Below, in pieces: positions 9,357 to 23,625 of a stretch of 24,210 nucleotides of DNA. Position 1 is the first letter of the stretch; every line of letters starts with the position of its first letter. The stretch spans positions 1 to 24,210 of IMG/VR virus record IMGVR_UViG_3300016457_001310; one strand, 5' to 3'. The position numbers and the translations under genes were made by a program. Under the pieces are notes generated by a model. It worked only from the letters and a program-made list of their open reading frames with translations. It searched no databases and was not told the origin of the DNA.

Positions 9357-10703
9357 TCACCCCAGACCCCTCTTCCTCAGGAACCTGGTTCTCTCTCTGA
9401 ACCTAAGAGAGGAGAAGGTTCTTAGATGGGTTCTGACAGCGTTGTACAGCTTCTCAAGCACGCTCCTATCCAAGCCGCTTGAGCTCCACTTGTCTAGCCA
9501 CCAGCTCTTCAGCTCGTCCTCGGACATGGTTCTGAGAGCGCCGTCTCCCCATCTATGCGGAGACGCCATGATCGCGAAGAGCTGTAGAACAGCGGACTTG
9601 TACATCCTCATGGTTACTGGGTCTACCGAGCCAAGCATGTTCCTAACCGTGTTGTAAACAACCCTCTCAAGGAACATCCTCTGCGATACTGGCAGAGCAA
9701 AGGTCTCGACACGCTCGCTAGCCGTCCACTGAGTCCTCTCCTCGTATGTCTGGTAGTTAGCCACAGCAAGGGCTGTAGCATGTATCCTGTTAACGAAGTT
9801 GCGCCACACAGCATCCACCAGCATCGTGACGATCGGTGGCGTGAGCTTGTACGGATGCACAACATCGCACCAGTGGAAGTAGTCCCATGGATACTCGTCC
9901 CAGTAGCCACACGCCTGGAAGTCTATCAGGTCCTCGTACTCGACCTCAACCTCCTGCAAGTCGTAGTTTATGTACGTAACCCTACCCGCGCTACCCTCCT
10001 TAGCCCACAGAGAGAAGTCCCACCATCCGTAGTCCCATGTAAGGGCCTGCTCCTTGACCGAGAAGATCGCTACCAGCCTATTGAAGAGGTTCCTAGCGAG
10101 CTCTGGGTTCATATTCAGGTTCCTAGCGATAGCTTCTACCCTATCCCTAGCCGTCCTCACGTCACCCCTCTTCTTTAGGAAGGCGAACAGCGTCGATTTG
10201 AAGAACTCCCTAACGGCTATCGGGTCGTAGTAGGAGTACCCATACCTAGAGATATCGTAGTAACCCTTCTCGGTTACGGAGGGCTTAAGGGCCTCCGCGA
10301 ACGGCGACTCCATGAACGCCTCCATGAAGTCGACCACGCTGTAGACCGACTTGATCATAATGTCCTCGAACTGCGGGTAGAGCTCCGCTATAACGTCGTC
10401 GATGCTTACCCTCTCAAGCTTTATCAGGACTCCCTTAGCGAACTCCTCGGGTGACGGAAGTTCGACACTCCATAACAGGTTCCATGGCTCTACCTCGCTT
10501 ATCGGTATACCCAGAAGAAAGAGGGATACAAGGGTAGAGAGAAGGGTGTCGCTCACTACCTGATCCGAGTAGTCCCTAAGCCAGTCAAAAATATTGAAAG
10601 ACTGGCTATAGACAGACCACGCTGCATCGTCCGACAGCGCCTTGTACCAGTACTTGCGCTTCTGATCCAGTAGCTTCCACGCCTCCCTGCTCAGAGCACC
10701 CAC
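9357..10703 (-). CDS. 448-aa putative minor structural protein
   Basis: Repeated aromatic-acid motifs GYYDISRYGYSYYDP, TWDYGWWDFSLW and GYWDEYPWDYFHW. Lies just downstream of the giant protein, as the second minor structural gene does in rudiviruses (from recall, not searched). Confidence 0.75.
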   Translation of the reverse strand: MGALSREAWKLLDQKRKYWYKALSDDAAWSVYSQSFNIFDWLRDYSDQVVSDTLLSTLVSLFLLGIPISEVEPWNLLWSVELPSPEEFAKGVLIKLERVSIDDVIAELYPQFEDIMIKSVYSVVDFMEAFMESPFAEALKPSVTEKGYYDISRYGYSYYDPIAVREFFKSTLFAFLKKRGDVRTARDRVEAIARNLNMNPELARNLFNRLVAIFSVKEQALTWDYGWWDFSLWAKEGSAGRVTYINYDLQEVEVEYEDLIDFQACGYWDEYPWDYFHWCDVVHPYKLTPPIVTMLVDAVWRNFVNRIHATALAVANYQTYEERTQWTASERVETFALPVSQRMFLERVVYNTVRNMLGSVDPVTMRMYKSAVLQLFAIMASPHRWGDGALRTMSEDELKSWWLDKWSSSGLDRSVLEKLYNAVRTHLRTFSSLRFRERTRFLRKRGLG

Positions 10704-10705
10704 AG

Positions 10706-10900
10706 CTACCTACCCCTTCGACCACCACGAATGGTCTCCTCAATGCGCTTCCTAACCTCCTCGAACTCCTTCCTAGCCTTCTCTATCCTCTCGTTCAGCT
10801 CCCTAACGCTCTTAGCCAGCTCCTCTATCCTCTTCCTGAGCTCGGGATCCACCTCGAAGCCCAGGTCGGTGCTGGGGCTAGACATGCGCCCTCCCCGCAT
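10706..10900 (-). CDS. Small coiled-coil protein
   Basis: LRKRIEELAKSVRELNERIEKARKEFEEVRKRIEE heptads. Fills the gap between two large genes. Probable start is the ATG at 10885 after GGGGAGGG. Confidence 0.75.
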   Translation of the reverse strand: MRGGRMSSPSTDLGFEVDPELRKRIEELAKSVRELNERIEKARKEFEEVRKRIEETIRGGRRGR

Positions 10901-10909
10901 TACCTATCT

Positions 10910-13900
10910 CTACCTACCGTATATTGTCTGTATGCGTTTCTTCTCAAGCTCCGCACCGTCAACTATCAGCGCTATCTCATCATCGGTGAGACCGTACTTC
11001 TTGAGAGCCTGTAGCTTCTGTATCAGGGTGTTCCTATCTATGATACCGTTGGCGTAGGCGTAGACCAGCCTGTTGCGGTACCACGCTATCTGCCTCCACA
11101 CGATGCGGTTCCTAGCCAGCTTCTTGTAGTACTCTATCTGCTTCTGGTACCTCGCTACGTCTATACCCCTAGCTCTGAGCACATCGCTGAGGATCTGCTC
11201 CCACTCTGGTATGTACCTGGCATCGGCTACGAGCTGGCGGATGGTCGGTACCAGCCAGCTAAGCACCCTGTACTCCTTGCGTAGCTGGAGAGCGAGGCTG
11301 AACACCTCAAGCTCCTTCCCGACCCAGCCGCCCTTCCTCATCCACTCAGCTACCTTGCTAGCGACCTCGCGAGACACCGTGAAGTACTCGTAGAGCCTCC
11401 TGTACTCAGCAACGAGCTGGTTCACCTCGCCCGCTATAGACCTAGCCTCTATGTACCTCAGCCACAGATCGGCAAAGTCCTTGGGAACCCTCCTAAGCTG
11501 TAGCACCCTATCGATTATGGTTCTGGGCACCTCGATGTACTCGACCATGGACGCTATGGTTCCTAGGCTAGGTACGTACTCCCTAGCGGACTCTATGAGT
11601 AGCTCGTAGTATACGCGCTTCTCGATCAGCTCTATCTCCTTCGGGGTGAAGCCGTAGCTCTTAGCGTCGTCGAGGAGCTTCTTCCACTCATCCTCAGAGA
11701 TAACACCGTACCTGAGAGCCCTAGCAGCAACGCTTAGAACCGCCTTGTAGTCGCTCTTAACTGGCCTCACCTGTATGTATTTCAGCCATATATCTATCCA
11801 CTCCTGTGGAACCCTCCTAGCCTCAAGCACCTTCCTAATCAGATCCTCCTTGAGCACGAGATACTCAGCCAGCGTTGCGAGCATCGTCGGTGTCGGTAGG
11901 TAGGCTCTCCTAAGCTCCATAGCCTCGGCAATCTCCTCCTCCAGATCCACGCGCTCCTTGATGAACTCGATCTCCTTGGATGTGAAGCCGTACTGACCGA
12001 GCTTATCTATGAACTCCTCCAGCTCCTTCTTGGTGATAACACCGTACCTGAGAGCCCTTATCTTGACCGAGAGCAACGACTTGACATCGCTCTTAATAGG
12101 CTTAGCCTCTATGTACTTCTTCCAGTAGTCTATCCACTCATCGGCTACCCTATGGTACTTCAGAGCGCTCAGAACCTTGTCCTCGGGCAAGACAATGTAC
12201 TCAGCAAGTGTTGCGAGCTGCGACGGTGTTGGAATCCTAACCTTAGCCTCCTCCAGCTTCTCCTCCAAGTCTATCCTATCCCTAAGTATCTTGATCTCCT
12301 CGTCGGTGAAGCCGTACTCCTTAGCCTTATCGATTATCTCGTCAAGCCTCTTCTTCTCTATGACGTTACGTAGGTAGGCACGGATAGCCACAGATATGTA
12401 CGCCTTGTAGTCGCTCTTCAGCGGCTTTACCTCTATATACTTCTCCCATATCTCCCTCCACTTCTCGGATACGCCATACCTCTTCAGAGCCTCCTCAACG
12501 AGATCCTTGGGTAGCGCTAGGTACTCGGCTAGAACCGCCAGCGTCGATGGAGACGGAATCCTCTCCCTAGCCGCCTGCCTAAGCTCGTCTATCCTCCTCT
12601 CGAAGGCGGCTATAACGTTGTACATCACCCACTCATGAGGCGCTATACCGAACGCCTGGAACACGTCCCTGTTAGCGTCGTAGAACGCAAGCAGCTTCTT
12701 AGCCTCGTCAGCACCCTCGATAACCAGCTCACCGCCCCTCACGGTGAACTTCATAGAGTACTTACTGAGTATATCCACGACCTCGTCGATGCCCATACCC
12801 AGAGCAAGCGCGTTGTATATCCTGGTCCTGAGAAGCGTCAGCTCGTCCTGTATCGGCTTCCTAGCAACGTAGAGCCTCCAGTACTGAAGCTCGTCGCTCG
12901 GCATGTTGAAGTGCTCCAAAGCCTTCAGGCTCGTGCTGATGGCTTCGGGCACGATCTCTAGGAGGGTCGCGTAGGTTGTTAGACCAGGCGTGTACCAGAC
13001 CACGTTGGCGTCTATATACTTCTTGGCGAGATCCTCGGAGAAGCCCAGCTTCTTGAGTTGCTCGATAGCCTCCGAGACGGCTATCCTCCTCGATCTGAGC
13101 AGGTTGATGATCGCCTTAGCCTTGACCTCCCTCTCGAACCTATAGACCATGAACTCCACGGAGAGCTCTATCGCCTCCCTAACGATGGGGTGCTCATGCA
13201 TCTTCTCCACTAGCTTGGATACCCAGCCCTTGGCCTCGTCAATCGTTACATAGCCGTAGCGCAGAGCCCATAACACCGACCACAGCAGGTACCTAGCGTA
13301 GAACCTCGTGCGCTCCCTAGCCTCAAGCTCTATGATCGCCTCGGCATACTTGCTCCAGGCCTCCCAGTAGCCAGTATCTAGCACTAGGGACAGCTCCTTG
13401 CCAGTGAGGCTCTTTACCGTCTGCTTGAAGAACTTCTCGTTTATCGCGCTGACAATATCGGCAATGATCTCCCTAGCCTTGGCTGGATCCACCACGTAGT
13501 AGGCTACGCTGCGTATGATGTACCTATACGCCTCTCTGTAGATATCGAGAGCCCTATCCATAGTTGCCCTGATCTCCAGGAGCTTGGACTCGGCTGGTAG
13601 GAACGCTATCGGGTACTCAACGGTTGCCGATACCCAGTCCCTCTTCTCTAGGTCGAAGTAGCCTACCTCGAACTTAACCGTGAAGAAACCCGAGAGTAGC
13701 TGGTGTAGGTGGTCTAGGCTCCATATACCCTCCTTGTATAGGTTGATGAAGCCAGTTCTGAGCAGTGTGCGCTCCTCGGTTAGGGCGTTTATTGTCTCGG
13801 CTATCGCTACCCACGGTATCCAGTACGGGTGTATACCCGTAGCCTGCAACACCCTACAGAACTGCTTGAGGTCGAAGACTATCTCACCCTTCTTCAGGTA

Positions 13901-16900
13901 CTGGAGGTAGAGATCCGCCATCGGTCTAGCCGACGCAGTGGTGCCCTCGGGTATGAGACTCTTGGTTATCTCGTGGATAGCCTTCTTCAGACCGATGCCG
14001 TATGCAGACCAGTAGTCGAAGAGGCCCCACCTTGTCATCCATCTCAGGTCTATCTTGGTGGGTATGTCAGCCATAAGCTCGATCATTATGGCGTTATCGG
14101 TTGGCCACCCAGGTTGCCACGGAAACCTGGCATAGTCATGCCACTTCATGTAGGTGCTGATCATCTTTTGCAACAAATCATATCTGAAGTTCAGCTCCTT
14201 GGGAGCCACAGCCTTCACAACCGTTGGGTCTAGACCGAAGGTCTTCATTATGTTCTCGTCGACTGGTGCCTCAGGGTTCCACAGCTCACCAGCGATACCC
14301 CTCCAGAAGAACTCTGCTAGCTTCTCTGGCGGTGGGTACCTGTAGTGCAGTAAGTAGAACATGAACGCCACGTCTGGCGTGAAGCCGTGCATAGCCATAA
14401 CTGCCGCAAAGTGCCTTGGATCCTGTATGATGTCCCTCACCATCATCCTAGCTAGCTCGCTCGGGCTCGGTATTGCCCACACCATCGATACTGGGAAGAG
14501 CCTCTCCTTCCTGGTGTATGACGTAAACCTATCCCATATCCTCAGAGCCCCCAGCTCCCTATCGTAGAGCTCGGATACATTGCCGAGTTGCTTAGCGACC
14601 TCCTCAGCGAGCTTGGTATTGAGACCATAGATCCTCTCTATAAAGCCCTTGTAGATACCACCCATCCTGAGCTGGTCTACAAACATCTTGTAGTTGTCCA
14701 TGAGTATCGGTGTCGGTATAGACCTCCTAACCAAGTTGAGAGTGTGCTCCATTGGTGGAAGCTCGACGGTTACGTACTCGGTCAGGTTGTACCTAGTGAT
14801 TGCCCTGGTTGGCTCGGCCCACCATATCATGTGGCCTATGATCATGTACCTCGCTACGTCTGGCATGAACTTCTCGAACTGCGAAACAGCCTTCTCAAGA
14901 ACGTCCTTCAGCTTCAGTCTTATCCTAGCACCGACACCGAGTGGCTCACCACTTATCTCGGTATCTGGTAACGCAGATACCAAGGGCTTCAGTATGAGGC
15001 CAACACCGTAGATGGCGGCCGATATCAGCACGCCAACGTTGAGCAGGTTGTATATGAACCTCACGGGGTTCTTCTTGGCCTCCTCTATCACCTCGCCGAG
15101 CTTCTCGACCATTATCGGTGTGAGCGGTAGTAGTATAGCCTCGATTATGGGGAACCATGGAGACGCAAGTATCTCGTAGAGCGCTGGGCTAGACCTAGCC
15201 ACTATCAGGTTGGTTATAGCCTTCATAGCGTTGCCGATAGCTGTAGCGATATCCTTACCGACCTCTCCAATAACCGAGATAACAGTCATTACAGCTCTGC
15301 CTACCCACGAAGCAAGCGTCTTAAATGCCGAGACAAACCAGTTACCGAGTCCCGTCAGGATGTTCCATAGCCACTGCGCACCCTCGACGATCTTCTGTCC
15401 GATCCACTGTAGAGAGTTCCAAACTGTCGTTACTAGCCTCTCTGGTAGCTGCATAACCGCGTTCACGAAGCCAGTGAGGTAGACACCCACCAGCTTCAGG
15501 TTCTCAGACACCTTGGTAAGAGCCTCGCCTAGCTTCGCGAAGCCCTCGCTTACCAGCGTTCCGAGCTTGGTCAGGTAGTCCCACAGTGATATGCCTACCT
15601 CTCTAAGCGTCCCGAAGACGATCTGCGGAATCCTCTGGATCTCCTCAACAACACCGCTTACCAGCGACGGGAACTGCTCGGTGAAGAACCTAGCCACCGT
15701 CTCCAGTCCGCTCCTAACCATGTCTAGGAACTGGGTGAACGCCTCGGTAATGGGCTTCACAACGTTCTCGCTGATCCACGTGCCTAGACCAGCTACCGCC
15801 TCCTTTACCTGGTCTACGAGGCTCGGAAGCGTCTCGGCTATGAAGCTCCTAACGGTCTCGAACCCCTCGGAGATGAAGCCGATCAGGTTCTCAAGAGCGC
15901 CCCTAAGCGGGGCGAGCACGTTGCTCTGGATGAAGCTCCATATACCCGCTAGGGCGCTCTGGATCTGGCTAACCATGCTAGCGATAGCCGACGATACGCT
16001 TCCGAGACCCTGCTGAACCGCTGATAGGATGCTCTGCACAGCCGATGTTAGAGGCGCGATAACGTTCTGCTGGATCCACGAAGCGATCCCCGCAACAGCA
16101 TCGCGGAGCTGAGCAACGAAACTATTGATGTAGCTCGGCAACTCCTCGGTGAAGAACCTAGATACGGTCTGTAGACCGCTGTTGATGAAGTCTATGAAGC
16201 TCTGGAAAGCCGCTGTTAGGGGTGCTACAACGTTCTCCTGTACCCAGGTAGCTATTCCAGATAGCGTCTGCTGTATAGACGCAATAGCCTGGCTTACGAA
16301 TGCTGGTAGCTCCTCGGTGAAGAACCTGGAGACCGTCTCCAGACCGCTACTAATTAGCTGTATCAACTGGCTAAACGCGTTGCTCAGCGGTGCAACAACG
16401 TTCTCCTGGATCCAGGTGGCTAGCTCACCAACAGCTTGCTGAACCATCGCTGGTATCTGCGACACAAAGCTCGTCACGGTGTCGAGACCGCGTGTAATCG
16501 TCTCTATCAGGTTATTTACAGCGGTTAGCAGGGGTGTGACCACATAGTCGTTTATCAGCGTGCTGATGTCGCTTATCCATTTCTGGAGCTCCGCAAACAT
16601 CTGCGGAACGGTCTCGGTGAAGAACGTCGTTAGCGTCGATATGCCCTGGCTGATCCAGCTCATCAGGTTGTTAATAGCGCTGAACAGCGGGTCGATTATG
16701 TCCTCCTGTATCCAGCTCCATACACCGCTTATCTGGCGACTTAGCCAATCCAGAGCGTTCTCAACCGTGCCTGGTATCTGCTGTAGGAAGCTCCACACCT
16801 GCTCAACGAGGTTCTTGATCGTGTCGAGGAACGGCTTAGCTACCGTGTCCCAGAGCCTGCGACCTATCTCCTCGACCGTCTGAGCAAACCAGGAGGCGAG

Positions 16901-17158
16901 CTCGCTCATACGGTCGTAGAGCCACTGCTGTAGCTGTCCAATCGGGTCGGTGATGCCGTGCTCCGAGGTAACGAGAGCCTCTAGATCGAGCTCCTCTAGA
17001 TCCCTGATAACCGTTACGGTGAAGACCTCCTCGATACCCTTGCTCCACCTAAGCTCCCATAGACCAGCCGCGCTGAGAGTAGCCGCTAGGTACTTAGCGT
17101 CCTCGGCGGTGAAGAGCTCCAGCCTCTGATGGCTGGTCACAGCTACACCCGAGAACAA
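10910..17158 (-). CDS. Giant (about 2080 aa) virion terminal-structure/fibre protein with tape-measure-like N-terminus and C-terminal helical repeats
   Basis: Uninterrupted 6.2-kb ORF. Residues ~70-660 carry amphipathic W/F-periodic repeats (WIQENVVAPL...GLETVSRFFTEELP). The C-terminal third has ~6 repeats starting P(S/T)PxxLAxLAEY, several with YGFTxxEI. The GTG at 17140 (RBS GGGTG) is an alternative start. Confidence 0.85.
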   Translation of the reverse strand: MFSGVAVTSHQRLELFTAEDAKYLAATLSAAGLWELRWSKGIEEVFTVTVIRDLEELDLEALVTSEHGITDPIGQLQQWLYDRMSELASWFAQTVEEIGRRLWDTVAKPFLDTIKNLVEQVWSFLQQIPGTVENALDWLSRQISGVWSWIQEDIIDPLFSAINNLMSWISQGISTLTTFFTETVPQMFAELQKWISDISTLINDYVVTPLLTAVNNLIETITRGLDTVTSFVSQIPAMVQQAVGELATWIQENVVAPLSNAFSQLIQLISSGLETVSRFFTEELPAFVSQAIASIQQTLSGIATWVQENVVAPLTAAFQSFIDFINSGLQTVSRFFTEELPSYINSFVAQLRDAVAGIASWIQQNVIAPLTSAVQSILSAVQQGLGSVSSAIASMVSQIQSALAGIWSFIQSNVLAPLRGALENLIGFISEGFETVRSFIAETLPSLVDQVKEAVAGLGTWISENVVKPITEAFTQFLDMVRSGLETVARFFTEQFPSLVSGVVEEIQRIPQIVFGTLREVGISLWDYLTKLGTLVSEGFAKLGEALTKVSENLKLVGVYLTGFVNAVMQLPERLVTTVWNSLQWIGQKIVEGAQWLWNILTGLGNWFVSAFKTLASWVGRAVMTVISVIGEVGKDIATAIGNAMKAITNLIVARSSPALYEILASPWFPIIEAILLPLTPIMVEKLGEVIEEAKKNPVRFIYNLLNVGVLISAAIYGVGLILKPLVSALPDTEISGEPLGVGARIRLKLKDVLEKAVSQFEKFMPDVARYMIIGHMIWWAEPTRAITRYNLTEYVTVELPPMEHTLNLVRRSIPTPILMDNYKMFVDQLRMGGIYKGFIERIYGLNTKLAEEVAKQLGNVSELYDRELGALRIWDRFTSYTRKERLFPVSMVWAIPSPSELARMMVRDIIQDPRHFAAVMAMHGFTPDVAFMFYLLHYRYPPPEKLAEFFWRGIAGELWNPEAPVDENIMKTFGLDPTVVKAVAPKELNFRYDLLQKMISTYMKWHDYARFPWQPGWPTDNAIMIELMADIPTKIDLRWMTRWGLFDYWSAYGIGLKKAIHEITKSLIPEGTTASARPMADLYLQYLKKGEIVFDLKQFCRVLQATGIHPYWIPWVAIAETINALTEERTLLRTGFINLYKEGIWSLDHLHQLLSGFFTVKFEVGYFDLEKRDWVSATVEYPIAFLPAESKLLEIRATMDRALDIYREAYRYIIRSVAYYVVDPAKAREIIADIVSAINEKFFKQTVKSLTGKELSLVLDTGYWEAWSKYAEAIIELEARERTRFYARYLLWSVLWALRYGYVTIDEAKGWVSKLVEKMHEHPIVREAIELSVEFMVYRFEREVKAKAIINLLRSRRIAVSEAIEQLKKLGFSEDLAKKYIDANVVWYTPGLTTYATLLEIVPEAISTSLKALEHFNMPSDELQYWRLYVARKPIQDELTLLRTRIYNALALGMGIDEVVDILSKYSMKFTVRGGELVIEGADEAKKLLAFYDANRDVFQAFGIAPHEWVMYNVIAAFERRIDELRQAARERIPSPSTLAVLAEYLALPKDLVEEALKRYGVSEKWREIWEKYIEVKPLKSDYKAYISVAIRAYLRNVIEKKRLDEIIDKAKEYGFTDEEIKILRDRIDLEEKLEEAKVRIPTPSQLATLAEYIVLPEDKVLSALKYHRVADEWIDYWKKYIEAKPIKSDVKSLLSVKIRALRYGVITKKELEEFIDKLGQYGFTSKEIEFIKERVDLEEEIAEAMELRRAYLPTPTMLATLAEYLVLKEDLIRKVLEARRVPQEWIDIWLKYIQVRPVKSDYKAVLSVAARALRYGVISEDEWKKLLDDAKSYGFTPKEIELIEKRVYYELLIESAREYVPSLGTIASMVEYIEVPRTIIDRVLQLRRVPKDFADLWLRYIEARSIAGEVNQLVAEYRRLYEYFTVSREVASKVAEWMRKGGWVGKELEVFSLALQLRKEYRVLSWLVPTIRQLVADARYIPEWEQILSDVLRARGIDVARYQKQIEYYKKLARNRIVWRQIAWYRNRLVYAYANGIIDRNTLIQKLQALKKYGLTDDEIALIVDGAELEKKRIQTIYGR

Positions 17159-17174
17159 GTTGATAATATGGAAG

Positions 17175-17182
17175 CTTAAAAA
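17175..17182 (-). promoter_or_regulatory. TATA box candidate for the giant protein gene; may also act as a T-tract terminator
   Basis: TTTTTAAG on the minus strand in the AT-rich gap 17159-17203. Confidence 0.5.
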
Positions 17183-17203
17183 CGTGGTATATGTATCTAC
17201 ACG

Positions 17204-17470
17204 TCACTCTATCCGCTTGTATATATCGTGCTTCCCGCTCATGATAATGAACTTCATCTTCGCTATCTCGGCACGGAGCTTGGCCTTCAGCTCAGCGTTG
17301 CTCTCAACATCAAGCGTAAAGATTGGGGATCTAAAACCGTTCCACTCAACGAAAACCGTTACCAAAAAACGCTTCTGCTTGTTGACCCACTCATGCTTGG
17401 TTATCTCAAGTATATAGACCTTCGCACCATCGAGCTCGACCAGGACAGGGGGAACGACTACCCTTGTCAT
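17204..17470 (-). CDS. Hypothetical 88-aa protein
   Basis: ATGA overlap with the upstream gene, AGGAG RBS, alpha/beta pattern. Confidence 0.8.
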   Translation of the reverse strand: MTRVVVPPVLVELDGAKVYILEITKHEWVNKQKRFLVTVFVEWNGFRSPIFTLDVESNAELKAKLRAEIAKMKFIIMSGKHDIYKRIE

Positions 17471-17742
17471 CTCCTAGCCCTTCTCTTTATGATCTTGTAG
17501 AAGTGCCACGTCGCTCTAACCACGCTCCTAGCCGCATCCACGAGCTCCTTGAGCTCTGGGTACCTATCCACGAGCTCGTTGGGTAACAGCGCTACGACGT
17601 AGCTCAGCTCCTGAGCCGACATTATGAGGTTGTTCATCGCATCTAGAAGCTCCTTCTGCTCGGGTGTCAGCTCCACGTCTTGCGCTGGTAGCTGGGTCTG
17701 AGCCTGAACCTGGGGAGCGCTAGGTGCGCGGGTCTCGGACAC
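17467..17742 (-). CDS. Hypothetical 91-aa helical protein
   Basis: Fits tightly between the glycosyltransferase and the 88-aa gene. GGGGGT RBS. Confidence 0.8.
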   Translation of the reverse strand: MSETRAPSAPQVQAQTQLPAQDVELTPEQKELLDAMNNLIMSAQELSYVVALLPNELVDRYPELKELVDAARSVVRATWHFYKIIKRRARR

Positions 17743-17746
17743 GTTC

Positions 17747-18793
17747 TCAACCCCCGTATGAGAACATTGCTAGGAACTCCCTATAAGTCTTCCGCATATC
17801 GAACTCGCGAGCTCTTTCCAGACACCTAGCCCTAACCTCGTCGCGGTTCTTAAGCACGTAGTCCTTTGCATATATAATCATCTCCGCGAAGTCCTTGGGG
17901 TCGTAGTAGTGCAACTCGTAGTCTATGGCACCTATCTCCGACCTGTATACAACGCTCCTCACCCTAACCCTGAAGCTGGTATCCTTCGTCGTTACCTCGC
18001 TCAGGGGCTCGTAATCAGCGTGCACAACTGGCTTGCCAGCCGCAAGAGCTTCTAGAACGGGATATCCGAAGCCCTCGGCTAGGGATGGCTGTGCATAGAG
18101 ATCGAAGCTGTGTAGAAGACCGTAGTACTCGTCCTCGCTCAGCTTGCCGAACTGGTCGATCAGTATAACGTTGTCAACACCGCTGTACTTCTCAACACCC
18201 TTGGAATCCGTTAGAACCACGAACTTTATCGACGGATCCCTATCGTGTACAAGCCTTATCACCTCAGCAAAGACATCGTGACCCTTACGCATGTAGCCAC
18301 CAGCTATGTACCCAACAACGAAGTCATCGTCTTTGAGACCCAGCTCCCTCCTAACGTACCTAGCCCTCCACCCGAACGCGCCAACAGCATCGATATCTAT
18401 ACCGTGGTAGACCACCTTGGTAACCGTTGCCCCAGCCTCCCTCAGCTTACTCATCGTGTACCGAGAGTTAGCGACAAAGCTGAGATCCCTATAGATCCAG
18501 GCATCGCCGTGAACGCGCCTAGCCCTCCCCTCTATAGTTGTGTAGAACACGCACTTCTTTCCGTACACAAGCATCTCCCTGCACACGAAAGCGAATGGAG
18601 ATACCCACGCTGGGTCGAAGGTCATCACAACGAGCACGCCGTCGACATCCTTGTAGACCTCTGGATCGGCATTGGGGTAGCCGAGGATATCCTTGACATT
18701 GACACCGCCCTCCCTGAGAACCGTAGCAACGTCGTTCGCTACGCGCTTAAGCGATGCGGATCTATGAGAAGTTAACACGATTACGCTAACCAT
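17747..18793 (-). CDS. GT-B fold family 4 glycosyltransferase
   Basis: FVANSRYT, VVYHGID, MRKG, and PSLAEGFGYPVLEALAAGKPVV with a canonical E-x7-E. Directly downstream of the capsid genes. Confidence 0.93.
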   Translation of the reverse strand: MVSVIVLTSHRSASLKRVANDVATVLREGGVNVKDILGYPNADPEVYKDVDGVLVVMTFDPAWVSPFAFVCREMLVYGKKCVFYTTIEGRARRVHGDAWIYRDLSFVANSRYTMSKLREAGATVTKVVYHGIDIDAVGAFGWRARYVRRELGLKDDDFVVGYIAGGYMRKGHDVFAEVIRLVHDRDPSIKFVVLTDSKGVEKYSGVDNVILIDQFGKLSEDEYYGLLHSFDLYAQPSLAEGFGYPVLEALAAGKPVVHADYEPLSEVTTKDTSFRVRVRSVVYRSEIGAIDYELHYYDPKDFAEMIIYAKDYVLKNRDEVRARCLERAREFDMRKTYREFLAMFSYGG

Positions 18794-18818
18794 GATCCCC
18801 TAGCGAGAAGCTCAGCGA

Positions 18819-18840
18819 GAGGTGTAAAAAATGGTTTTTG
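18819..18840 (-). terminator. Oligo-T terminator of the capsid transcript
   Basis: CAAAAACCATTTTTTACACCTC on the minus strand, 30 nt after the MCP2 stop. A near-identical motif follows the divergent operon at 20617-20636. Confidence 0.6.
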
Positions 18841-18869
18841 GCTCTTAGGGGAGGTTATCGATAGGCTGG

Positions 18870-19244
18870 TTAGTACGGTGGTACGGCTCCTATGAGTGCC
18901 TCTATGATCCTGTCGAGCACTGCTGGATCGCACTTGTAGGCCGTTACGAAGTAGCTCTTGATGCCGCTAACCTCCTTCTGGAGTGTTAGACCGCTGTGGC
19001 TGAACATTGTCTTAGCTACTATCTGCGCGAAGGCTAGATAGGGAGCCCATAGACCAGTTGGCACACCCTCTTCGCTCAGGATGTTCCTAGCTACCTCCAC
19101 AGCGTTGTATATGGCGGCAGTAGCGCTCTCGAACCTAGCCTCCATAATGGGCTTGACAGCCGTCAGCCTGTTGGTCACGTTGGTACCGTCGTACTTAGCC
19201 TCGTACTTGGCTCTCATATCACCTAATCTCTTAACGATGGGCAT
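18870..19244 (-). CDS. Major capsid protein 2, SIRV2-like (Adnaviria) fold
   Basis: AKYEAKY...NILSEEGVPTGLWAPYLAFAQIVAK...SGIKSYFVTAYKCDPAVLDRIIEALIG matches the rudivirus MCP pattern as I recall it (AKWQAKF...VLTQYGITGPNRAIYQGFGLKVAR...NGLKGYYISAFNANPQVLDAVVNIITG). Strong GGGGGTGA RBS. Confidence 0.88.
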   Translation of the reverse strand: MPIVKRLGDMRAKYEAKYDGTNVTNRLTAVKPIMEARFESATAAIYNAVEVARNILSEEGVPTGLWAPYLAFAQIVAKTMFSHSGLTLQKEVSGIKSYFVTAYKCDPAVLDRIIEALIGAVPPY

Positions 19245-19270
19245 GGGATCTCACCCCCCACCCATCACCT

Positions 19271-19627
19271 TTATCCAACTATCAGGTTCGCGATCTTGTC
19301 TAGTATAGCGGGGTCGGCACCCTTAGCAACGAACCACTGCTTGAGACCGCTGGCAATCGCTTGCAGGTCAGCACCCTCGTGGCTCAGAGCCTTGCTTGCT
19401 AGCTTCATCGCGAACGCGTAGTAGACACCGTGGAACCCTGCTGGAACACCCTCGCTCTCAAGTATGTTCCTAACGCGCTCCCTGACAGCCGCCATCACGC
19501 CGCTGCCCTCGATGTACCTAGTCACAGCGATGTCCTTTACCGCACCGTATCTAGTACCTGTCTGATCTGGTGGTGTCTTTGCCTTGAACTTCTCTACTCG
19601 GTCTGCAAGGGTCTTGACTATGGGCAT
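19271..19627 (-). CDS. Major capsid protein 1, SIRV2-like (Adnaviria) fold
   Basis: Paralog of MCP2: shared MPIVK-L-D start, RNIL--EGVP-G, Y-AFA, SH-G--LQ, SG-K--FV and DPA-LD-I. Confidence 0.88.
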   Translation of the reverse strand: MPIVKTLADRVEKFKAKTPPDQTGTRYGAVKDIAVTRYIEGSGVMAAVRERVRNILESEGVPAGFHGVYYAFAMKLASKALSHEGADLQAIASGLKQWFVAKGADPAILDKIANLIVG

Positions 19628-19664
19628 AGGTACCTACCTCGATGCTCAATTCGGGCACGAAGCG

Positions 19665-19672
19665 TTAATATA
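19665..19672. promoter_or_regulatory. Bidirectional TATA element between the MCP operon and the divergent genes
   Basis: TTAATATA on plus, TATATTAA on minus, in a 100-nt gap between divergent starts at 19627 (-) and 19728 (+). Confidence 0.55.
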
Positions 19673-19727
19673 CGTAGTATGTAATAGAGAGCGTCTGGAG
19701 CTGTATCGCAGTGCTGGTGGTTCGGGT

Positions 19728-20264
19728 ATGACCAAGAACGAGATGAATATACTGCCCGATAAAGCCGAGGAAGCCGAGTCCCATCTCTTCGAGGTGTCTC
19801 AGGATGGAACGGTCTGGATATGGAACATCAAGGAGCCCGTCATAATCGAGGTCATCAAGCTGTTCGTGCGGAAGTGGGTCGATACCATAGAGAACTTCGC
19901 TCAGTACGTAGCTCGTAGGCTCCAGCGCAACGGTGTCATCACCGAGGTCAACTCGACTATTTCGCCAACGAGCGACGGCTACGCGCTTAACATCACTATC
20001 AGGGTGAGGGGCGTGAAGTACGATCTGCTGAAGAAGCAGTGGCGGCTGATCAAGAGGCATGCTCAGGATAGGACGACTGTTAGCTATAGGTATAAGAGGA
20101 TGCTAGACCTTCTAGAGAGGTTAGAGAAGGCGGGTGACAGGCTTGGCAGAGCGATTAGAGATCCTCTTACCGCGGAGTATATACGAGCGGATAAAGAGGA
20201 AGGCGGAGCAAAAGAAGATGCGTCTCCAGGACCTCGTGCTCAGAGCCATAATGAAGGTTCTTGA
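19728..20264 (+). CDS. Hypothetical 178-aa protein
   Basis: The track ORF from 19584 overlaps MCP1. The in-frame ATG at 19728 (MTKNEM) has a GGTGG RBS. Confidence 0.8.
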   Translation: MTKNEMNILPDKAEEAESHLFEVSQDGTVWIWNIKEPVIIEVIKLFVRKWVDTIENFAQYVARRLQRNGVITEVNSTISPTSDGYALNITIRVRGVKYDLLKKQWRLIKRHAQDRTTVSYRYKRMLDLLERLEKAGDRLGRAIRDPLTAEYIRADKEEGGAKEDASPGPRAQSHNEGS

Positions 20265-20277
20265 GGAGGACTGAGCC

Positions 20278-20616
20278 ATGGACGTGAACAGGCTGGTCAA
20301 CTGGCTCCTAGGTGGCTGCGGTAAGGAGAGGGAGAAGATAGAGCTACAGTCGATACTGTTCCAGCTCGCGGAGGAGCTCCACAGAGGCAACGCAACCGAG
20401 GACGAGGTTACCAACACCGTTGCGGAGCTCTGCGAAGCCATAGTCGTGCTCGCACAGCAATGCGGAAAGACCATATCTCAGGATCAGTGCGTAGACATGG
20501 TTACGAGAGCCGTTAAGAACACCGTCCCCTTCGGAGCGATGAGCATGAAGCTCAGGTCGCTCATAAGGTCTAGAAGGGGCTCTAGGGCCACATCCTCAGA
20601 GTCCTCCATACTCTGA
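20278..20616 (+). CDS. Hypothetical 112-aa helical protein with four Cys and a basic tail
   Basis: GAGGAGG RBS. Follows the previous gene by 13 nt and is followed by a T-tract. Confidence 0.8.
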   Translation: MDVNRLVNWLLGGCGKEREKIELQSILFQLAEELHRGNATEDEVTNTVAELCEAIVVLAQQCGKTISQDQCVDMVTRAVKNTVPFGAMSMKLRSLIRSRRGSRATSSESSIL

Positions 20617-20636
20617 CAAACACCGTTTTTCACCTC
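20617..20636 (+). terminator. Oligo-T terminator
   Basis: CAAACACCGTTTTTCACCTC immediately after the stop, followed by a pyrimidine-rich tract. Confidence 0.55.
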
Positions 20637-20714
20637 CCTATTCTCTCCCCTAGGGGCTGTGACCGAAAGGCTTATTAGTGTACACCCCCTAGTGGGTATC
20701 TGGGATGGCACACC

Positions 20715-21245
20715 GTGCCCTACAAGAACATCAAGATCCACCTCGACACCTACAACAGGCTGAACGCGCTTAAGGAACCGAGCGAGACGTTCGACACCCT
20801 AATCAATCGGCTTATCGATAGGGTTAGGGAGCTGGAGGAAAAGGTCGCTGAGCTTGAGCAACGGGTTCCGATAGAGGTTGAGCAGAGGGTTCGGGAGAGG
20901 GTTGCTTCGCTAGCCGAGGAGAAGGTTAGGAAGGAGGTGGACAGCATACAGCTAGACAAGGCGGCTTGGTACATAACGAAGCTGGTGTTCTCGGTTCAGA
21001 GCCTAAAGGATCTGGTACAGATCAACGCTCCTCCCTACGAGATCGATAAGCAGTTGAAGAGAGTGGAGAAGGTGTTGATGCAGATCTGGGAGAGGTACAG
21101 GGTGGAGACCAGGACGCTCTACGAGGTCGCGAAGCAATACAGGGTGGAGCCCACGAGGGAGAACCTCATCCTCCTGAACGAGGCGACGAAGGAGGTGGTG
21201 AAGAGCATCTTCGTGAAGATGCTCTCAATTGAGGTAATCAGGTAG
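20715..21245 (+). CDS. DNA-binding protein: N-terminal RHH/VapB-like domain, coiled coil, helical C-domain
   Basis: YKNIKIHLDTYNRLNALKEPSETFDTLINRLI is the archaeal 'kTIxvxxxtYxrLxxlKxxxESFxxvIxRLi' ribbon-helix-helix pattern, followed by heptads VRELEEKVAELEQRV. Confidence 0.75.
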   Translation: MPYKNIKIHLDTYNRLNALKEPSETFDTLINRLIDRVRELEEKVAELEQRVPIEVEQRVRERVASLAEEKVRKEVDSIQLDKAAWYITKLVFSVQSLKDLVQINAPPYEIDKQLKRVEKVLMQIWERYRVETRTLYEVAKQYRVEPTRENLILLNEATKEVVKSIFVKMLSIEVIR

Positions 21246-21310
21246 ATTCTCGATTGCTTCGCTATCCCAGAGCGGGGGATATCCATGCGCTCTTAAACAC
21301 TCAAGAAAAA

Positions 21311-21380
21311 TCGAAACTCAGTTACGATATTTGTAACATATTGAATATGTTATATAGAGAGATACTAGACTGAGTTTCGA
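21311..21380. repeat. Nested inverted repeats in an AT-rich non-coding region
   Basis: Outer perfect 12-bp arms TCGAAACTCAGT (21311-21322) and ACTGAGTTTCGA (21369-21380). Inner perfect 9-bp arms TAACATATT-G-AATATGTTA (21334-21352). Confidence 0.9.
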
Positions 21381-21586
21381 GTGCCATTGCTTTCTTAACC
21401 TCCCCCTACGTCCGTGGGGAGTGCGCTGGACTTTTCTCTATGGAGAGAAGGGTATATCCCCCGAAAGTGTTGCATAGGAATTGAGGGGTCTGATTTGCGT
21501 GACCCCCTAACAGGTTTAGAACCTTATTTAGTAACCAGCTAGTGAGATTGAAAGGTTTGAGGAGAGGTATACTTATATAATCTTCC

Positions 21587-22339
21587 TTGTCATATATAAG
21601 AAGAGGGATCAGAACAGTGCTCACTCATCACATGCAACAAAACATCGTCTCAGTATACGGTCTCATCACCAAGTTGTTCTTACAGTATCTTAGAAAGTAT
21701 ATAAAAGTTGTTGGTAAACAAGTGGTTGTCCATCAGATGCCTAGGCATAAGACCACCTTTATCCTGGTGCCACTATCGTTTGATGAGGAGCGCTACTGGT
21801 TCTTCGTTCTGATAGCCTCGGATTCTAAAGATCCTTGGAGCCCCAAGGAGGTGTGGCAAAGGATACTGAGAACGTACTTCTCAAGGTTCTATCCATGGAT
21901 AAGGCAGATCATGGGAAGCAGTGCGTTTAGATACATCGAGGGAGGTACAGTCCTCTACATAGGTGCGATCTCTCGCGGGTGCTATAGCTTCGGTGGAAAG
22001 GAGATAGAGCCTAACGTGATGCTGTTCACGAGGGATATAAGGAACTTGATACGGTGGCTACGGACGTGGAACCCAACAAAGATAAAGGAGTTCTTCGGGG
22101 ACTTCGTCTCCGCGTTTGAGGAGTTTTCTTTCCGCCTTGCACAGCAGGTGAAACACGTTTTCTCTGCTCTTCGTAAGCTCTTCGCTGATAAGGCTGAGCT
22201 CATCGAGCGCAAATCGAGGATGAAAGACGTTGAGCCATATGGCCCAGTGAAGCAGAAGATAGTGATGCTGAAGACCCTGAGCGAGGTGTTCGAAGAGCTA
22301 GTTAGGTACGCATGTGGAAAGCCAGTTGTTGTAATGTGA
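21587..22339 (+). CDS. Hypothetical protein; true start probably 21722 or 21737, about 200 aa
   Basis: Long ORF. The 5' part is AT-rich and contains a BRE/TATA-like AGAAAGTATATAAAA near 21692-21706, which suggests a start at the in-frame GTG 21722 or ATG 21737 (MPRHKTT). Confidence 0.7.
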   Translation: MSYIRRGIRTVLTHHMQQNIVSVYGLITKLFLQYLRKYIKVVGKQVVVHQMPRHKTTFILVPLSFDEERYWFFVLIASDSKDPWSPKEVWQRILRTYFSRFYPWIRQIMGSSAFRYIEGGTVLYIGAISRGCYSFGGKEIEPNVMLFTRDIRNLIRWLRTWNPTKIKEFFGDFVSAFEEFSFRLAQQVKHVFSALRKLFADKAELIERKSRMKDVEPYGPVKQKIVMLKTLSEVFEELVRYACGKPVVVM

Positions 22340-22352
22340 CATATGGTGGTGC

Positions 22353-22883
22353 GTGAGCATGTCTGGGTTGGAACACCTTAGGAACCTGATCTCTAGGCTT
22401 GAGGAGCTGGAGAAGCGTAGGTGTAGAGCGGTGTACATGAAGGGATTCAGCGCGGGGATAGTCATCAGGACGCTGCTGGAGAGGTTTAGGGCTGTTGAGG
22501 CGGCTCTCAGCGGTGAGGATACATCGGAGGGTGTCTGCACGGAGCTGGCGAACTTCATCAGGTTCCTAGGCAACGCGCACTGGCGTAACGGGGTTCTCGA
22601 AACCGACTGCTTCGTCACCGTGACCATGGACGTGCCCCTGTTGATGAAGGAGGTGTTCGTGCGCTACGTAACGCTGTGCGGCTACAGGGATAGGGAGGCT
22701 CTGGAGGTGGCTAGGAGGGTTCTGGGCATAGAGAGCGTCTCGGAGCTACGTAGGAAGGTAAAGAAGAAGAAGCGTAGAAAGATAAGGGAGGAGGAGGTAG
22801 AGGCTAGCTCGGAGGTTGATACCGAAGAAGTGGTTGAAAGCGATGTAGAGTATGCTTCAGAGGATGTCGAGGTAGTTAGCTGA
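22353..22883 (+). CDS. Hypothetical protein with basic patch and acidic C-terminal tail
   Basis: GGTGGTG RBS. RRKVKKKKRRK is followed by an E/D/V/S-rich tail. Confidence 0.8.
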   Translation: MSMSGLEHLRNLISRLEELEKRRCRAVYMKGFSAGIVIRTLLERFRAVEAALSGEDTSEGVCTELANFIRFLGNAHWRNGVLETDCFVTVTMDVPLLMKEVFVRYVTLCGYRDREALEVARRVLGIESVSELRRKVKKKKRRKIREEEVEASSEVDTEEVVESDVEYASEDVEVVS

Positions 22884-22892
22884 AAACGTTTC

Positions 22893-23318
22893 TCAGATGA
22901 TCTCGGATAGCTTTTTGGCTCGGTCGAACATCTGTTTTGTGATTACGTACCTAACGCCTTTCTCCCACTGTTGCTTCTCAAGAACCTCAAGTGGGAATAC
23001 GTACCACTGCTTCTCTTCCGAGACCCTGACCGCTATGTATGCCTCTCCCCCTGCTCTCCTAGCGAAGTTCTCCAGCATCCACACCTTGGGCGCGGCGAGG
23101 TATATCGCGTCTCTATGTTTCCTGAGCTTAACCTCGAAGACCAGAACCCTGTACCTAGAACCATCGAACTTAACAGCGAAGACATCTGGATAGAAAACCC
23201 TTCTTGTCTTAGCACCAGAGGCGGGGGCTCTCATTACTGCATACCCTGCTCTTCTAAGCTTCTTAACCAGCTCCAGCTCAGCTTGCTTACCCCTTCGATA
23301 GAAGCTCATTTCCAGCAC
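22893..23318 (-). CDS. hjc: Archaeal Holliday junction resolvase (Hjc family, PD-(D/E)xK)
   Basis: RRGKQAELELVKKLRRAGYAVMRAPASG...YPDVFAV...VFEVK...LENFARRAGG-AYIAVR...W is the full Hjc motif set. Confidence 0.93.
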   Translation of the reverse strand: MLEMSFYRRGKQAELELVKKLRRAGYAVMRAPASGAKTRRVFYPDVFAVKFDGSRYRVLVFEVKLRKHRDAIYLAAPKVWMLENFARRAGGEAYIAVRVSEEKQWYVFPLEVLEKQQWEKGVRYVITKQMFDRAKKLSEII

Positions 23319-23543
23319 CTACTCTATGTAGTCGTCGTACAGAATTAGATACACGTATTCCTCGCATCTCCCTAGGTTCTCCTCTATCCTCTTCCTGAAA
23401 TCCTCGTGGGGGCTGAAGATGATGACCCATCGAGGGTACCGCCTCTTCATGTACTCCAACAGCTCCTCCCAGCTCCCGAACCTGAGGTATATAGTTTCAT
23501 CCGTCGACGCTATATCTATACGTGCACAGAGCACCATAAACAC
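23319..23543 (-). CDS. Hypothetical protein of about 72-74 aa
   Basis: Abuts hjc. GGTAGGTG RBS before the ATG at 23537. Ends with LILYDDYIE. Confidence 0.7.
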   Translation of the reverse strand: MFMVLCARIDIASTDETIYLRFGSWEELLEYMKRRYPRWVIIFSPHEDFRKRIEENLGRCEEYVYLILYDDYIE

Positions 23544-23625
23544 CTACCTACTCTACCTATCGCAACACTCCTTGGCTAGGTGCCTGAGGACGCGTCTGAG
23601 AACCATGGTCATCAACCTGAGCGCT

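What the first reader, a model, noticed from the sequence alone, without database searches (positions are those of the whole stretch)
15180..16950. Tape-measure-like amphipathic repeat array fused to the giant virion protein
Seen: about 600 residues of W/F-periodic helical repeats (WIQEDIIDPL, WIQENVVAPL, WVQENVVAPL, WIQQNVIAPL, FIQSNVLAPL, WISENVVKPI, alternating with GLETVSRFFTEELP-like units). DNA-level echoes such as GGTGAAGAAC occur near 15681, 16148, 16316 and 16616. Established: such periodic Trp/Phe repeats characterise phage tape measure proteins. Inference: filament length is set by the genome, so this array may instead measure a terminal tail or fibre, or form a membrane-crossing DNA delivery conduit. 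Repeat number could vary between strains.
Basis: partly seen in the sequence, partly recalled or inferred. Interest (0 to 1): 0.6.

Follow-up and report, generated by a model that had tools for sequence, protein, structure and literature searches.

The report
Tape-measure-like arm of archaeal virus fibre protein
The repeats are real and form the long helical N-terminal arm of the end-fibre protein of an uncultivated rod-shaped archaeal virus; the arm resembles phage tail tape-measure proteins in sequence and changes length between near-identical strains, which gives a testable idea of how such viruses cap their ends and deliver DNA.

Summary
Observation confirmed. Window 15180-16950 (minus strand) encodes residues ~70-660 of a 2,082-aa protein (10910-17158). 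Seven clear 47-56-aa units (residues 149-516) sit in a ~590-residue, almost all-helical arm. Its hydrophobic period is a coherent 3.70 residues (about 11/3). A conserved hydrophobic segment follows at 701-730.

The protein is not an orphan. It is a homologue of the rudiviral terminal-fibre/minor structural protein SIRV2 P1070 (phrog_7334). It lies in a typical filamentous archaeal virus (Adnaviria) module with two SIRV2-type capsid genes, glycosyltransferases and Hjc.

The tape-measure protein (TMP) likeness is supported. A profile of the arm hits solved phage TMPs first (80alpha gp57, E 1.5e-33). TMP PHROGs dominate for this protein, its relatives and P1070 itself. So the arm is an ancestral part of the family, not a fusion.

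Across 76 homologues the core is fixed (~700 aa). The N arm (520-1241 aa) and a second C-terminal array of ~108-aa units both vary. Strains with 96-99% identical cores differ by clean 184-aa and 108-aa blocks.

The mechanism is inferred: the arm is a bundled plug or anchor in the virion end that may be expelled into the host membrane. New member of a known family; the TMP link appears unreported in the literature I could search.

The parts
10910..17158 (-). Gene for the 2,082-aa giant protein (P0001), a homologue of the rudiviral terminal-fibre/minor structural protein P1070. A TTG start is assumed; a metagenome gene call starts 6 codons later (P0002, 2,076 aa).
16922..16957 (-). Invariant N-terminal motif at the start of the arm (G68, D71, P72, G74, Q75 invariant; W79 at least 90%) in 38 aligned homologues. 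Residues 1-67 upstream are poorly conserved.
15179..16945 (-). Tape-measure-like amphipathic helical arm, residues 72-660. Hydropathy period is 3.70 residues, charge is low, and Pro recurs about every 28 residues.
15611..16714 (-). Seven clear repeat units of 47-56 aa (residues 149-516), each opening with a W/F-I/V-Q/S-x-N/D-V/I-V/I-x-P-L/I motif (six of seven match exactly).
15239..15433 (-). Trp-rich stretch (residues 576-640) with W spaced about 11 residues apart. It corresponds approximately to the profile region that aligns with highest posterior to the W-repeat region of the phage 80alpha tape measure.
14969..15058 (-). Strongly hydrophobic, transmembrane-like segment (residues 701-730; Kyte-Doolittle up to 2.2). 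A comparable segment lies upstream of the core in most homologues.
12719..14848 (-). Fixed-length conserved core (residues 771-1480). It is about 680-710 aa in homologues. Thirty-eight of the 39 invariant columns of alignment A2 fall within it. No solved-structure relative was found.
10913..12718 (-). C-terminal arm (residues 1481-2082) with five charged helical units of about 108-112 aa starting at residues 1534, 1642, 1754, 1862 and 1970. It is homologous to the C-terminus of SIRV2 P1070.
18870..19627 (-). Two tandem SIRV2-type major capsid protein genes (124 and 118 aa). They mark the element as a filamentous archaeal virus (Adnaviria).

Best explanation
The region encodes the N-terminal arm of a P1070-family terminal-structure protein of an uncultivated filamentous archaeal virus with two capsid proteins.

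Shown by the tools:
- The arm is about 590 residues of nearly continuous amphipathic alpha-helix with an 11/3-type (3.7-residue) hydrophobic stripe. It has seven clear 47-56-aa units and degenerate Trp-rich flanks.
- Its sequence profile resembles the W/F-repeat region of tailed-phage tape measure proteins more than any other solved protein.
- It is followed by a conserved hydrophobic segment, a fixed core of about 700 aa, and a second, highly charged repeat arm.
- Both arms change length by whole blocks, even between near-identical strains.

Inferred:
- A few copies sit at each virion end (three, if it follows the three terminal fibres of rudiviruses).
- Their poorly charged N arms bundle into an elongated helical plug or anchor lodged in the lumen of the capsid end, as a tape measure lies in a tail tube.
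- The core caps the end, and the charged C arms project as the fibres.
- The number of units would then set the length of that terminal structure.

More speculative: on receptor binding the arm is released and its hydrophobic segment enters the host membrane to help the DNA cross, as proposed for the phage T5 tape measure.
For: Homology to P1070:
- phrog_7334 matches the N, middle and C parts of the protein (E 2e-22, 8e-08, 5e-34).
- That family is P1070 (E 4e-153).
- tblastn of the C arm hits 'minor structural protein' genes in 42 rudivirus records.
- BLASTP against P1070 gives E 1e-13 for the C arm and 8e-08 for the N arm.
- The only confident fold match is a rudiviral structural protein (E 3.6e-09).
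- P1070 is described as the terminal-fibre protein.

Context: SIRV2-type capsid genes, glycosyltransferases and Hjc occur in the window and in 6 of 6 homologue contigs. None has an HK97 capsid, terminase or portal gene.

Helical amphipathic arm:
- AlphaFold2 secondary structure is helix from 72 to 728.
- Period 3.70 has power 299, against a shuffle maximum of 85.
- The period is 3.60-3.73 in 21 homologues and in P1070.

Tape-measure likeness:
- Profile search of the PDB: 80alpha TMP 1.5e-33, FtbJ 4e-24, other TMPs 1e-20 to 3e-14. Generic helical bundles reach 4e-12 at best.
- TMP PHROGs: 1e-20 here, 3e-72 for P0005, 1e-10 for P1070.
- The score against one TMP survives repeat- and phase-preserving permutation (60.5 bits against a maximum of 43.1).

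Hydrophobic segment.

Buried-versus-exposed hint: in this protein the N arm has K+R 5% and D+E 9%. The C arm has about 16-20% of each.

Length variation: a clean 184-aa block in the N arm and a 108-aa block in the C arm separate proteins 96% identical overall.

T5 precedent: the TMP is a trimer in the tube lumen, is expelled, and its hydrophobic stretch inserts in the membrane.
Against: - No experiment or structure places the N arm inside the virion. Its topology, copy number and oligomeric state are all inferred.
- The AlphaFold2 model of the arm has low confidence (mean pLDDT 49).
- A three-copy complex prediction gave no verdict.
- Part of the TMP similarity comes from the shared amphipathic period and repeat structure. 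Against the RGL3 TMP the real score is reached by 9 of 100 phase-preserving permutations.
- The low charge of the arm is not general. Several homologues have 11-12% of each charge class.
- Rapid length change is equally typical of exposed, host-facing fibres.
- The gene has none of the tail-module neighbours that define a true tape measure.
Confidence: 0.45

Rival explanations
1. The N arm is itself the exposed fibre shaft. It would be a long coiled coil with an 11/3 period that projects from the virion end, with unit number setting the reach of the fibre. The C arm or the core would then be the capsid-proximal part.
For: - P1070 is regarded as the fibre protein.
- The arm varies between near-identical strains, as host-facing fibres do.
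- The long uninterrupted helices and coherent 3.7 period suit a straight coiled coil.
Against: - In this protein the arm is poorly charged and Ser/Thr/Gln/Ala-rich, while the C arm has the charged make-up expected of a solvent-exposed helical rod.
- The best sequence relatives are lumenal tape measures.
- A hydrophobic segment sits between the arm and the core.
Confidence: 0.25
2. The arm is an apolipoprotein-like or perilipin-like lipid-surface binder. Its Pro-punctuated 11/3 amphipathic helices would lie on a membrane and tie the terminal complex to a viral envelope, or to the host membrane during assembly or entry, with no ruler role.
For: - 3.7-residue period with Pro about every 28 residues.
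- Weak Pfam hits to ApoLp-III, Perilipin and Prominin.
- PDB hits to apolipoprotein A-IV and apolipophorin III.
- Two capsid genes are typical of enveloped filamentous archaeal viruses.
Against: - All those Pfam hits are below their gathering scores.
- The PDB hits are 20 to 30 orders of magnitude weaker than the TMP hits.
- The same arm is present in P1070 of rudiviruses, which are non-enveloped (from my own knowledge).
Confidence: 0.1
3. The TMP likeness is convergence of amphipathic helical repeats. The arm would be a tolerant spacer whose length drifts through unequal recombination and has no length-dependent function.
For: - Units show no one-to-one orthology even with a 72%-identical relative.
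- Block indels are frequent.
- Part of the TMP score is reproduced by phase-preserving permutations.
Against: - The arm is kept in all 76 mapped homologues and in P1070.
- It is framed by an invariant N-terminal motif and a conserved hydrophobic segment.
- The hydrophobic phase is maintained across units whose lengths are near-integer numbers of turns.
- P0001 and P0003 keep arm length (770 and 765 aa) through opposite indels of 48 and 44 aa.
- TMP profile E-values reach 3e-72.
Confidence: 0.15

Closest known systems
SIRV2 P1070 (ORF1070) and its rudiviral orthologues (phrog_7334), the minor structural protein thought to form the three terminal fibres
   Same: - Homologous over the N arm, part of the core and the C-terminal repeats.
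- Same order of parts.
- Same amphipathic 3.6-3.7 period in the N arm.
- Same kind of gene neighbourhood: capsid gene, glycosyltransferase, then the large protein, methyltransferase, glycosyltransferase.
   Different: - Twice as long (2,082 against 1,070 aa).
- The N arm is about 590 aa against roughly 220 aa.
- Five clear C-terminal units against about two.
- Sequence identity is only 21-28% in the aligned parts.
- The virus has two tandem capsid genes and 52-55% G+C over most of the window.
Tail tape measure proteins of Caudoviricetes (for example Staphylococcus phage 80alpha gp57, PDB 6v8i; phage T5 pb2)
   Same: - Long helical region with periodic Trp/Phe markers and an 11/3 hydrophobic period.
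- Best profile matches among solved proteins and PHROGs.
- A hydrophobic stretch follows the helical region, as in T5 pb2.
- Length changes by unit blocks.
   Different: - No tail tube, tail chaperone, distal tail or hub genes nearby.
- The virus has no tail.
- The array is only the first third of a protein that continues with a 700-aa core and a second repeat arm.
- In the clear units Trp recurs every 46-56 residues, not every 11.
Large P1070-like minor structural proteins reported in metagenomic filamentous archaeal viruses (Chiyouviridae)
   Same: A large P1070 homologue is reported in the Bathyarchaeia virus Chiyouvirus, which like this window has two capsid protein genes.
   Different: That paper, as far as I read it, does not describe the tape-measure-like arm, the hydrophobic segment or the length variation. 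I did not compare sequences with that virus directly.

Membership tests
P1070-like terminal-fibre / minor structural protein of Adnaviria (phrog_7334) | Significant sequence similarity to rudiviral P1070 orthologues | tested here: met
   - phrog_7334 E 2e-22 (N part), 8e-08 (middle), 5e-34 (C part).
- P1070 itself scores 4e-153 against that family.
- BLASTP E 1e-13.
- tblastn hits in 42 rudivirus records.
P1070-like terminal-fibre / minor structural protein of Adnaviria (phrog_7334) | Structural similarity to a rudiviral orthologue | tested here: met
   Foldseek against BFVD: K4NWV3, structural protein of Sulfolobales Mexican rod-shaped virus 1, E 3.6e-09, probability 1.00. The model covers residues 771-1900 only, with mean pLDDT 77.
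P1070-like terminal-fibre / minor structural protein of Adnaviria (phrog_7334) | Encoded in a filamentous archaeal virus genome next to SIRV2-type capsid genes | tested here: met
   PF12193 capsid genes occur in the window and in 6 of 6 homologue contigs.
P1070-like terminal-fibre / minor structural protein of Adnaviria (phrog_7334) | Present in virions and forming the terminal fibres | not testable with these tools
   This rests on the literature for cultured rudiviruses and on record annotations.
Caudoviricetes tail tape measure protein | Long alpha-helical region with periodic Trp/Phe repeats | tested here: met
   Helix from 72 to 728 in the model. The period is 3.70 and W spacing is 9-13 in the flanks and 46-56 in the clear units. 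The TMP criterion comes from PMC3271669.
Caudoviricetes tail tape measure protein | Profile similarity to recognised TMP families | tested here: met
   - 80alpha gp57 E 1.5e-33, with further solved TMPs behind it.
- 19 of the 25 best PHROG families are annotated 'tail length tape measure protein'.
- Permutation controls give a mixed result.
Caudoviricetes tail tape measure protein | Gene lies in a tail module (tail tube, frameshifted chaperones upstream, distal tail or hub proteins downstream) | tested here: not met
   No tail, portal, terminase or HK97 capsid family appears in the window or in six related contigs. It is therefore not filed as a tape measure protein.
Caudoviricetes tail tape measure protein | Protein length sets the length of the structure built around it | not testable with these tools
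   Only the length variation of the arm could be shown.
Exchangeable apolipoprotein / perilipin-type 11-mer amphipathic helix proteins | Pfam family score above the gathering threshold | tested here: not met
   ApoLp-III 20.6 bits against a cut-off of 36.3; Perilipin 9.6 against 33; Prominin 13.5 against 34.3.
Pfam PF04513 Baculo_PEP_C | Score above the gathering threshold | tested here: met
   48.1 bits against a cut-off of 38, at residues 158-239. This is a match of helical repeats. It says nothing about function here and recurs across the whole family.

The most novel reading that the evidence does not exclude
The W/F-repeat module is shared by descent, or by transfer, between tailed-virus tape measures (Duplodnaviria) and the terminal protein of filamentous archaeal viruses (Adnaviria). 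In the latter it would work as an expellable, membrane-inserting plug. Rod-shaped archaeal viruses would then deliver DNA through a tape-measure-like device without having a tail.
Probability: 0.2. Interest if true: 0.8.

Novelty: new member of a known kind. Interest (0 to 1): 0.5.

Why it matters
How filamentous archaeal viruses cap their ends and get DNA across the host envelope is not well understood (reviews entry). The terminal fibre protein turns out to have three parts: a tape-measure-like arm with a hydrophobic segment, a fixed hub, and a second modular arm. This turns that question into concrete experiments on cultured models such as SIRV2, whose P1070 has the same layout. It also points to a protein module shared, by descent or by convergence, between two otherwise unrelated virus realms. 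Finally, it shows natural length polymorphism that could be matched to virion end dimensions.

Tried and rejected
- Megablast of 10000-24210 against phage records: no match.
- tblastn of the core (residues 740-1480) against phage records: no match.
- Tandem Repeats Finder: neither array was detected, because the copies are too diverged.
- AlphaFold2 model of residues 1-770: mean pLDDT 49, so I used it only for secondary structure and ran no fold search on it.
- Foldseek against the PDB and VIA-align wide search with the core plus C-arm model: nothing above noise, E above 0.003 and Z at most 7.4 on short helical hairpins. The model is long, so single domains remain untested.
- Complex prediction, three copies of residues 291-515: no verdict, score 0.00, controls not run. 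This is not evidence either way.
- phmmer of SIRV2 P1070 residues 1-300 against the PDB: nothing.
- The 582-aa neighbour against SIRV2 ORF564: no similarity.
- The 448-aa neighbour against SIRV2 ORF488: only E 6e-04.
- Literature search for 'Adnaviria' plus 'tape measure': 0 papers. 'Baculo_PEP_C' plus 'archaeal': 1 paper, judged irrelevant from its title and abstract.
- Rejected: a recent fusion of a phage tape measure onto a virion protein, because the arm is family-wide.
- Rejected: a head-tailed virus context, because no such genes are present.
- Not used: another genetic code, the read tools and the big representative search. The word search gave 136 homologues, so they were not needed.
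Full report
**What the window is.** The window is a 24,210-nt linear IMG/VR virus record. Most genes lie on the minus strand. Two tandem genes (18870-19244 and 19271-19627) match the SIRV2-type coat family PF12193 (E 1e-12 and 9e-12). They are 25-30% identical to Rudiviridae capsid proteins. Two GT1 glycosyltransferases, a SAM methyltransferase and an archaeal Holliday junction resolvase complete a typical filamentous archaeal virus (Adnaviria) gene set. A 28,306-nt contig of the same virus exists in a JGI metagenome. Megablast finds no close relative among deposited virus genomes.

**The observation.** The finding lies in a 2,082-aa ORF (10910-17158, minus strand). Coordinates 15180-16950 correspond to residues about 70-660.

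- GGTGAAGAAC occurs four times, at 15680, 16148, 16316 and 16616, against 0.03 expected.
- DNA repeat families have spacings of 144-168 nt.
- An HMM built from the units finds seven units at residues 149-516, each 47-56 aa.
- The flanks (72-148 and 517-660) are degenerate but share the same character. Trp there is spaced 9-13 residues apart, and 46-56 residues apart in the clear units.

The strongest feature is a coherent hydropathy period of 3.70 residues over the whole arm. Its power is 299, against a mean of 48 and a maximum of 85 in 200 shuffles. The signal starts near residue 56 and stops near 660. Unit lengths of 56, 52 and 48 are close to 15, 14 and 13 turns, so the hydrophobic stripe stays in phase across units. 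Pro recurs about every 28 residues. AlphaFold2 with a 38-sequence alignment predicts helix from 72 to 728, in segments of up to 94 residues. Confidence is low (mean pLDDT 49), so I used only the secondary structure. A strongly hydrophobic segment follows at 701-730.

**What the protein is.** The word-based protein search found 136 homologues of 1,176-2,863 aa in metagenomes. Those with a source label are attributed to Thermoprotei, Archaeoglobales, Thermococci and Thaumarchaeota, among others.

- PHROG family phrog_7334 matches the N, middle and C parts of the protein. That family is SIRV2 ORF1070/P1070 (E 4e-153).
- tblastn of the C arm hits the 'minor structural protein' gene of 42 rudivirus records.
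- BLASTP against P1070 gives E 1e-13 for the C arm and 8e-08 for the N arm.
- A model of residues 771-1900 (mean pLDDT 77) has one confident fold match, the structural protein of Sulfolobales Mexican rod-shaped virus 1 (E 3.6e-09). It has no reliable match in the PDB.
- P1070 is described in the literature as the protein thought to form the terminal fibres that recognise the host (10.1101/2023.08.24.554615; PMC7911016).
- All six homologue contigs that I inspected carry a SIRV2-type capsid gene, a glycosyltransferase and mostly Hjc in the same order. None has tailed-virus genes.

**Is the arm tape-measure-like?** Yes, at the level of sequence profiles.

- A profile of 38 N arms hits solved tape measures first: 80alpha gp57 (E 1.5e-33), FtbJ (4e-24), and others from 1e-20 to 3e-14. 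Designed bundles, chemoreceptors, talin and apolipoproteins reach 4e-12 at best.
- The alignment to gp57 is best over the Trp-repeat stretch just before the hydrophobic region.
- Nineteen of the 25 best PHROG families are annotated as tail length tape measure protein (E about 1e-20).
- The arm of homologue P0005 reaches 3e-72. The arm of SIRV2 P1070 reaches 1e-10, with only tail families besides its own.
- Two annotated tape measures show the same 3.6-3.7 period in the matched region.

Controls give a mixed picture.

- Full and phase-preserving shuffles of the arm score about 19 +/- 2 bits, against 76.6 and 49.7 bits for the real sequence.
- The strictest control keeps both the repeat structure and the amphipathic phase. 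Under it, the clear array still beats all 100 permutations against one tape measure (60.5 bits against a maximum of 43.1).
- Against the other tape measure it does not: 26.9 bits is reached by 9 of 100 permutations.

So part of the likeness is shared architecture, and common descent is not settled. By gene context this is not a tape measure, because there is no tail module. It works like one at most by analogy.

**Architecture and variation.** I mapped two anchors in the conserved middle onto 76 homologues.

- The core is fixed at about 680-710 aa. The exceptions are a few of roughly 1,130-1,260 aa, at least some of which carry intein domains.
- The N arm ranges from about 520 to 1,241 aa.
- The C arm ranges from 89 to 1,056 aa, in steps that fit units of about 108 aa.
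- P0007 and P0013, 96% identical overall, differ by one clean 184-aa block in the N arm and one 108-aa block in the C arm.
- P0010 and P0011, with 99% identical cores, differ by the same 184-aa block plus smaller indels.
- The nearest relative, P0003, has an 83% identical core. Its units have no one-to-one orthologues here (25-50% identity in all pairings).
- Even so, total arm length is kept (770 against 765 aa) through opposite indels of 48 and 44 aa.

The refuting case of a fixed globular domain is excluded. The arm is ancestral to the family rather than fused on.

**Mechanism.**

- Shown: the composition, helicity, period, hydrophobic segment, modular variation and homologies described above.
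- Inferred: the poorly charged N arm (K+R 5%, D+E 9% here) is the buried part and the strongly charged C arm (about 16-20% of each) is the exposed fibre. On this reading a few copies per end bundle their N arms into a plug or anchor in the capsid lumen, the core caps the end, and the C arms splay out.
- From memory, not checked here: the original SIRV descriptions reported a roughly 6-nm-wide, 50-nm-long plug and three 28-nm fibres at each end. At 0.15 nm per helical residue, the arm here would span up to about 88 nm if fully extended.
- By analogy: in T5 the trimeric tape measure is expelled and its 46-residue hydrophobic stretch is proposed to form a membrane channel. The arm here could likewise be released on receptor binding.
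- A three-copy complex prediction gave no verdict.

The rivals are an exposed fibre shaft, a lipid-surface binder, and a drifting spacer with convergent sequence. Each is weighed in its own section of this report.

**Novelty.** The family and its presumed role are known, and P1070 homologues have been noted in metagenomic filamentous archaeal viruses. I found no paper linking Adnaviria with tape measures. That library lacks most subscription journals, however, and automated JGI names such as 'phage-related protein' show that the similarity is detectable. I rate this a new member of a known family, with a useful and apparently unreported reading of its N arm.

**Limits.**

- There is no virion data for this virus.
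- The start codon is uncertain by six codons.
- The transmembrane call rests on hydropathy alone.
- The core was searched only as part of a 1,130-residue model.
- CheckV's 23% completeness is probably not meaningful for this virus type.

Noticed in passing
window 10913-12718 (residues 1481-2082): A second, independent repeat array: five charged helical units of about 108-112 aa, with DNA periods of 324 and 336 nt. It is homologous to the P1070 C-terminus. In homologues this arm ranges from 89 to 1,056 aa, in steps that fit whole units, and one clean 108-aa block separates 96%-identical proteins.
   Followed up: partly
window 16922-16957 (residues 68-79): An invariant motif (G68, D71, P72, G74, Q75; W79 in at least 90%) marks the start of the arm in 38 homologues, while the 67 residues before it are poorly conserved. 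It could be a docking or processing site. I did not see it by eye in SIRV2 P1070.
   Followed up: no
homologues P0053, P0103, P0108 (PF14528); P0049, P0050: Some family members carry intein or homing-endonuclease domains (P0053, P0103, P0108). In P0049, P0050 and P0053 the otherwise fixed core is expanded to about 1,130-1,260 aa; whether P0049 and P0050 hold inteins was not checked.
   Followed up: no
window 5466-6017 (-), 183 aa: A small protein with a tail-fibre-like domain (phrog_4176 'tail fiber protein' E 1.7e-14; PF23140 Gp80 E 1e-04). A similar gene lies near the giant gene in L003. It is a candidate receptor-binding partner of the terminal complex.
   Followed up: no
window 18870-19244 and 19271-19627 (-): Two tandem paralogous SIRV2-type capsid genes. 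Some related contigs show only one recognisable copy (L002, L003, L009, L010) and others show two (L007, L008).
   Followed up: partly
window 9357-10703 (-), 448 aa: The conserved neighbour just downstream of the giant gene is weakly similar to SIRV2 ORF488 (E 6e-04). Proteins of about 440-465 aa lie just upstream of the giant gene in L002, L003 and L009, and L003 also has a 448-aa one further downstream; homology was not tested. It may be another minor structural protein.
   Followed up: partly
L007 (JGI 3300016457, contig of 28,306 nt): A longer contig of the same virus extends the window by about 4 kb and adds a STIV_B116-like protein among others. No terminal repeats were examined.
   Followed up: no
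L008 22774-24559: An IS200/IS605-type element (Y1 transposase plus OrfB/TnpB-like gene) sits inside the structural module of a 49.9-kb relative.
   Followed up: no
window about 20000-20300: GC skew changes sign where gene orientation switches from minus to plus, so two divergent transcription units meet here.
   Followed up: no
window 7414-8127 (-), 237 aa: A type I phosphodiesterase / nucleotide pyrophosphatase-like protein (PF01663, E 3.6e-06) lies between the methyltransferase and a glycosyltransferase in the structural module. This looked unusual to me for this virus type.
   Followed up: no
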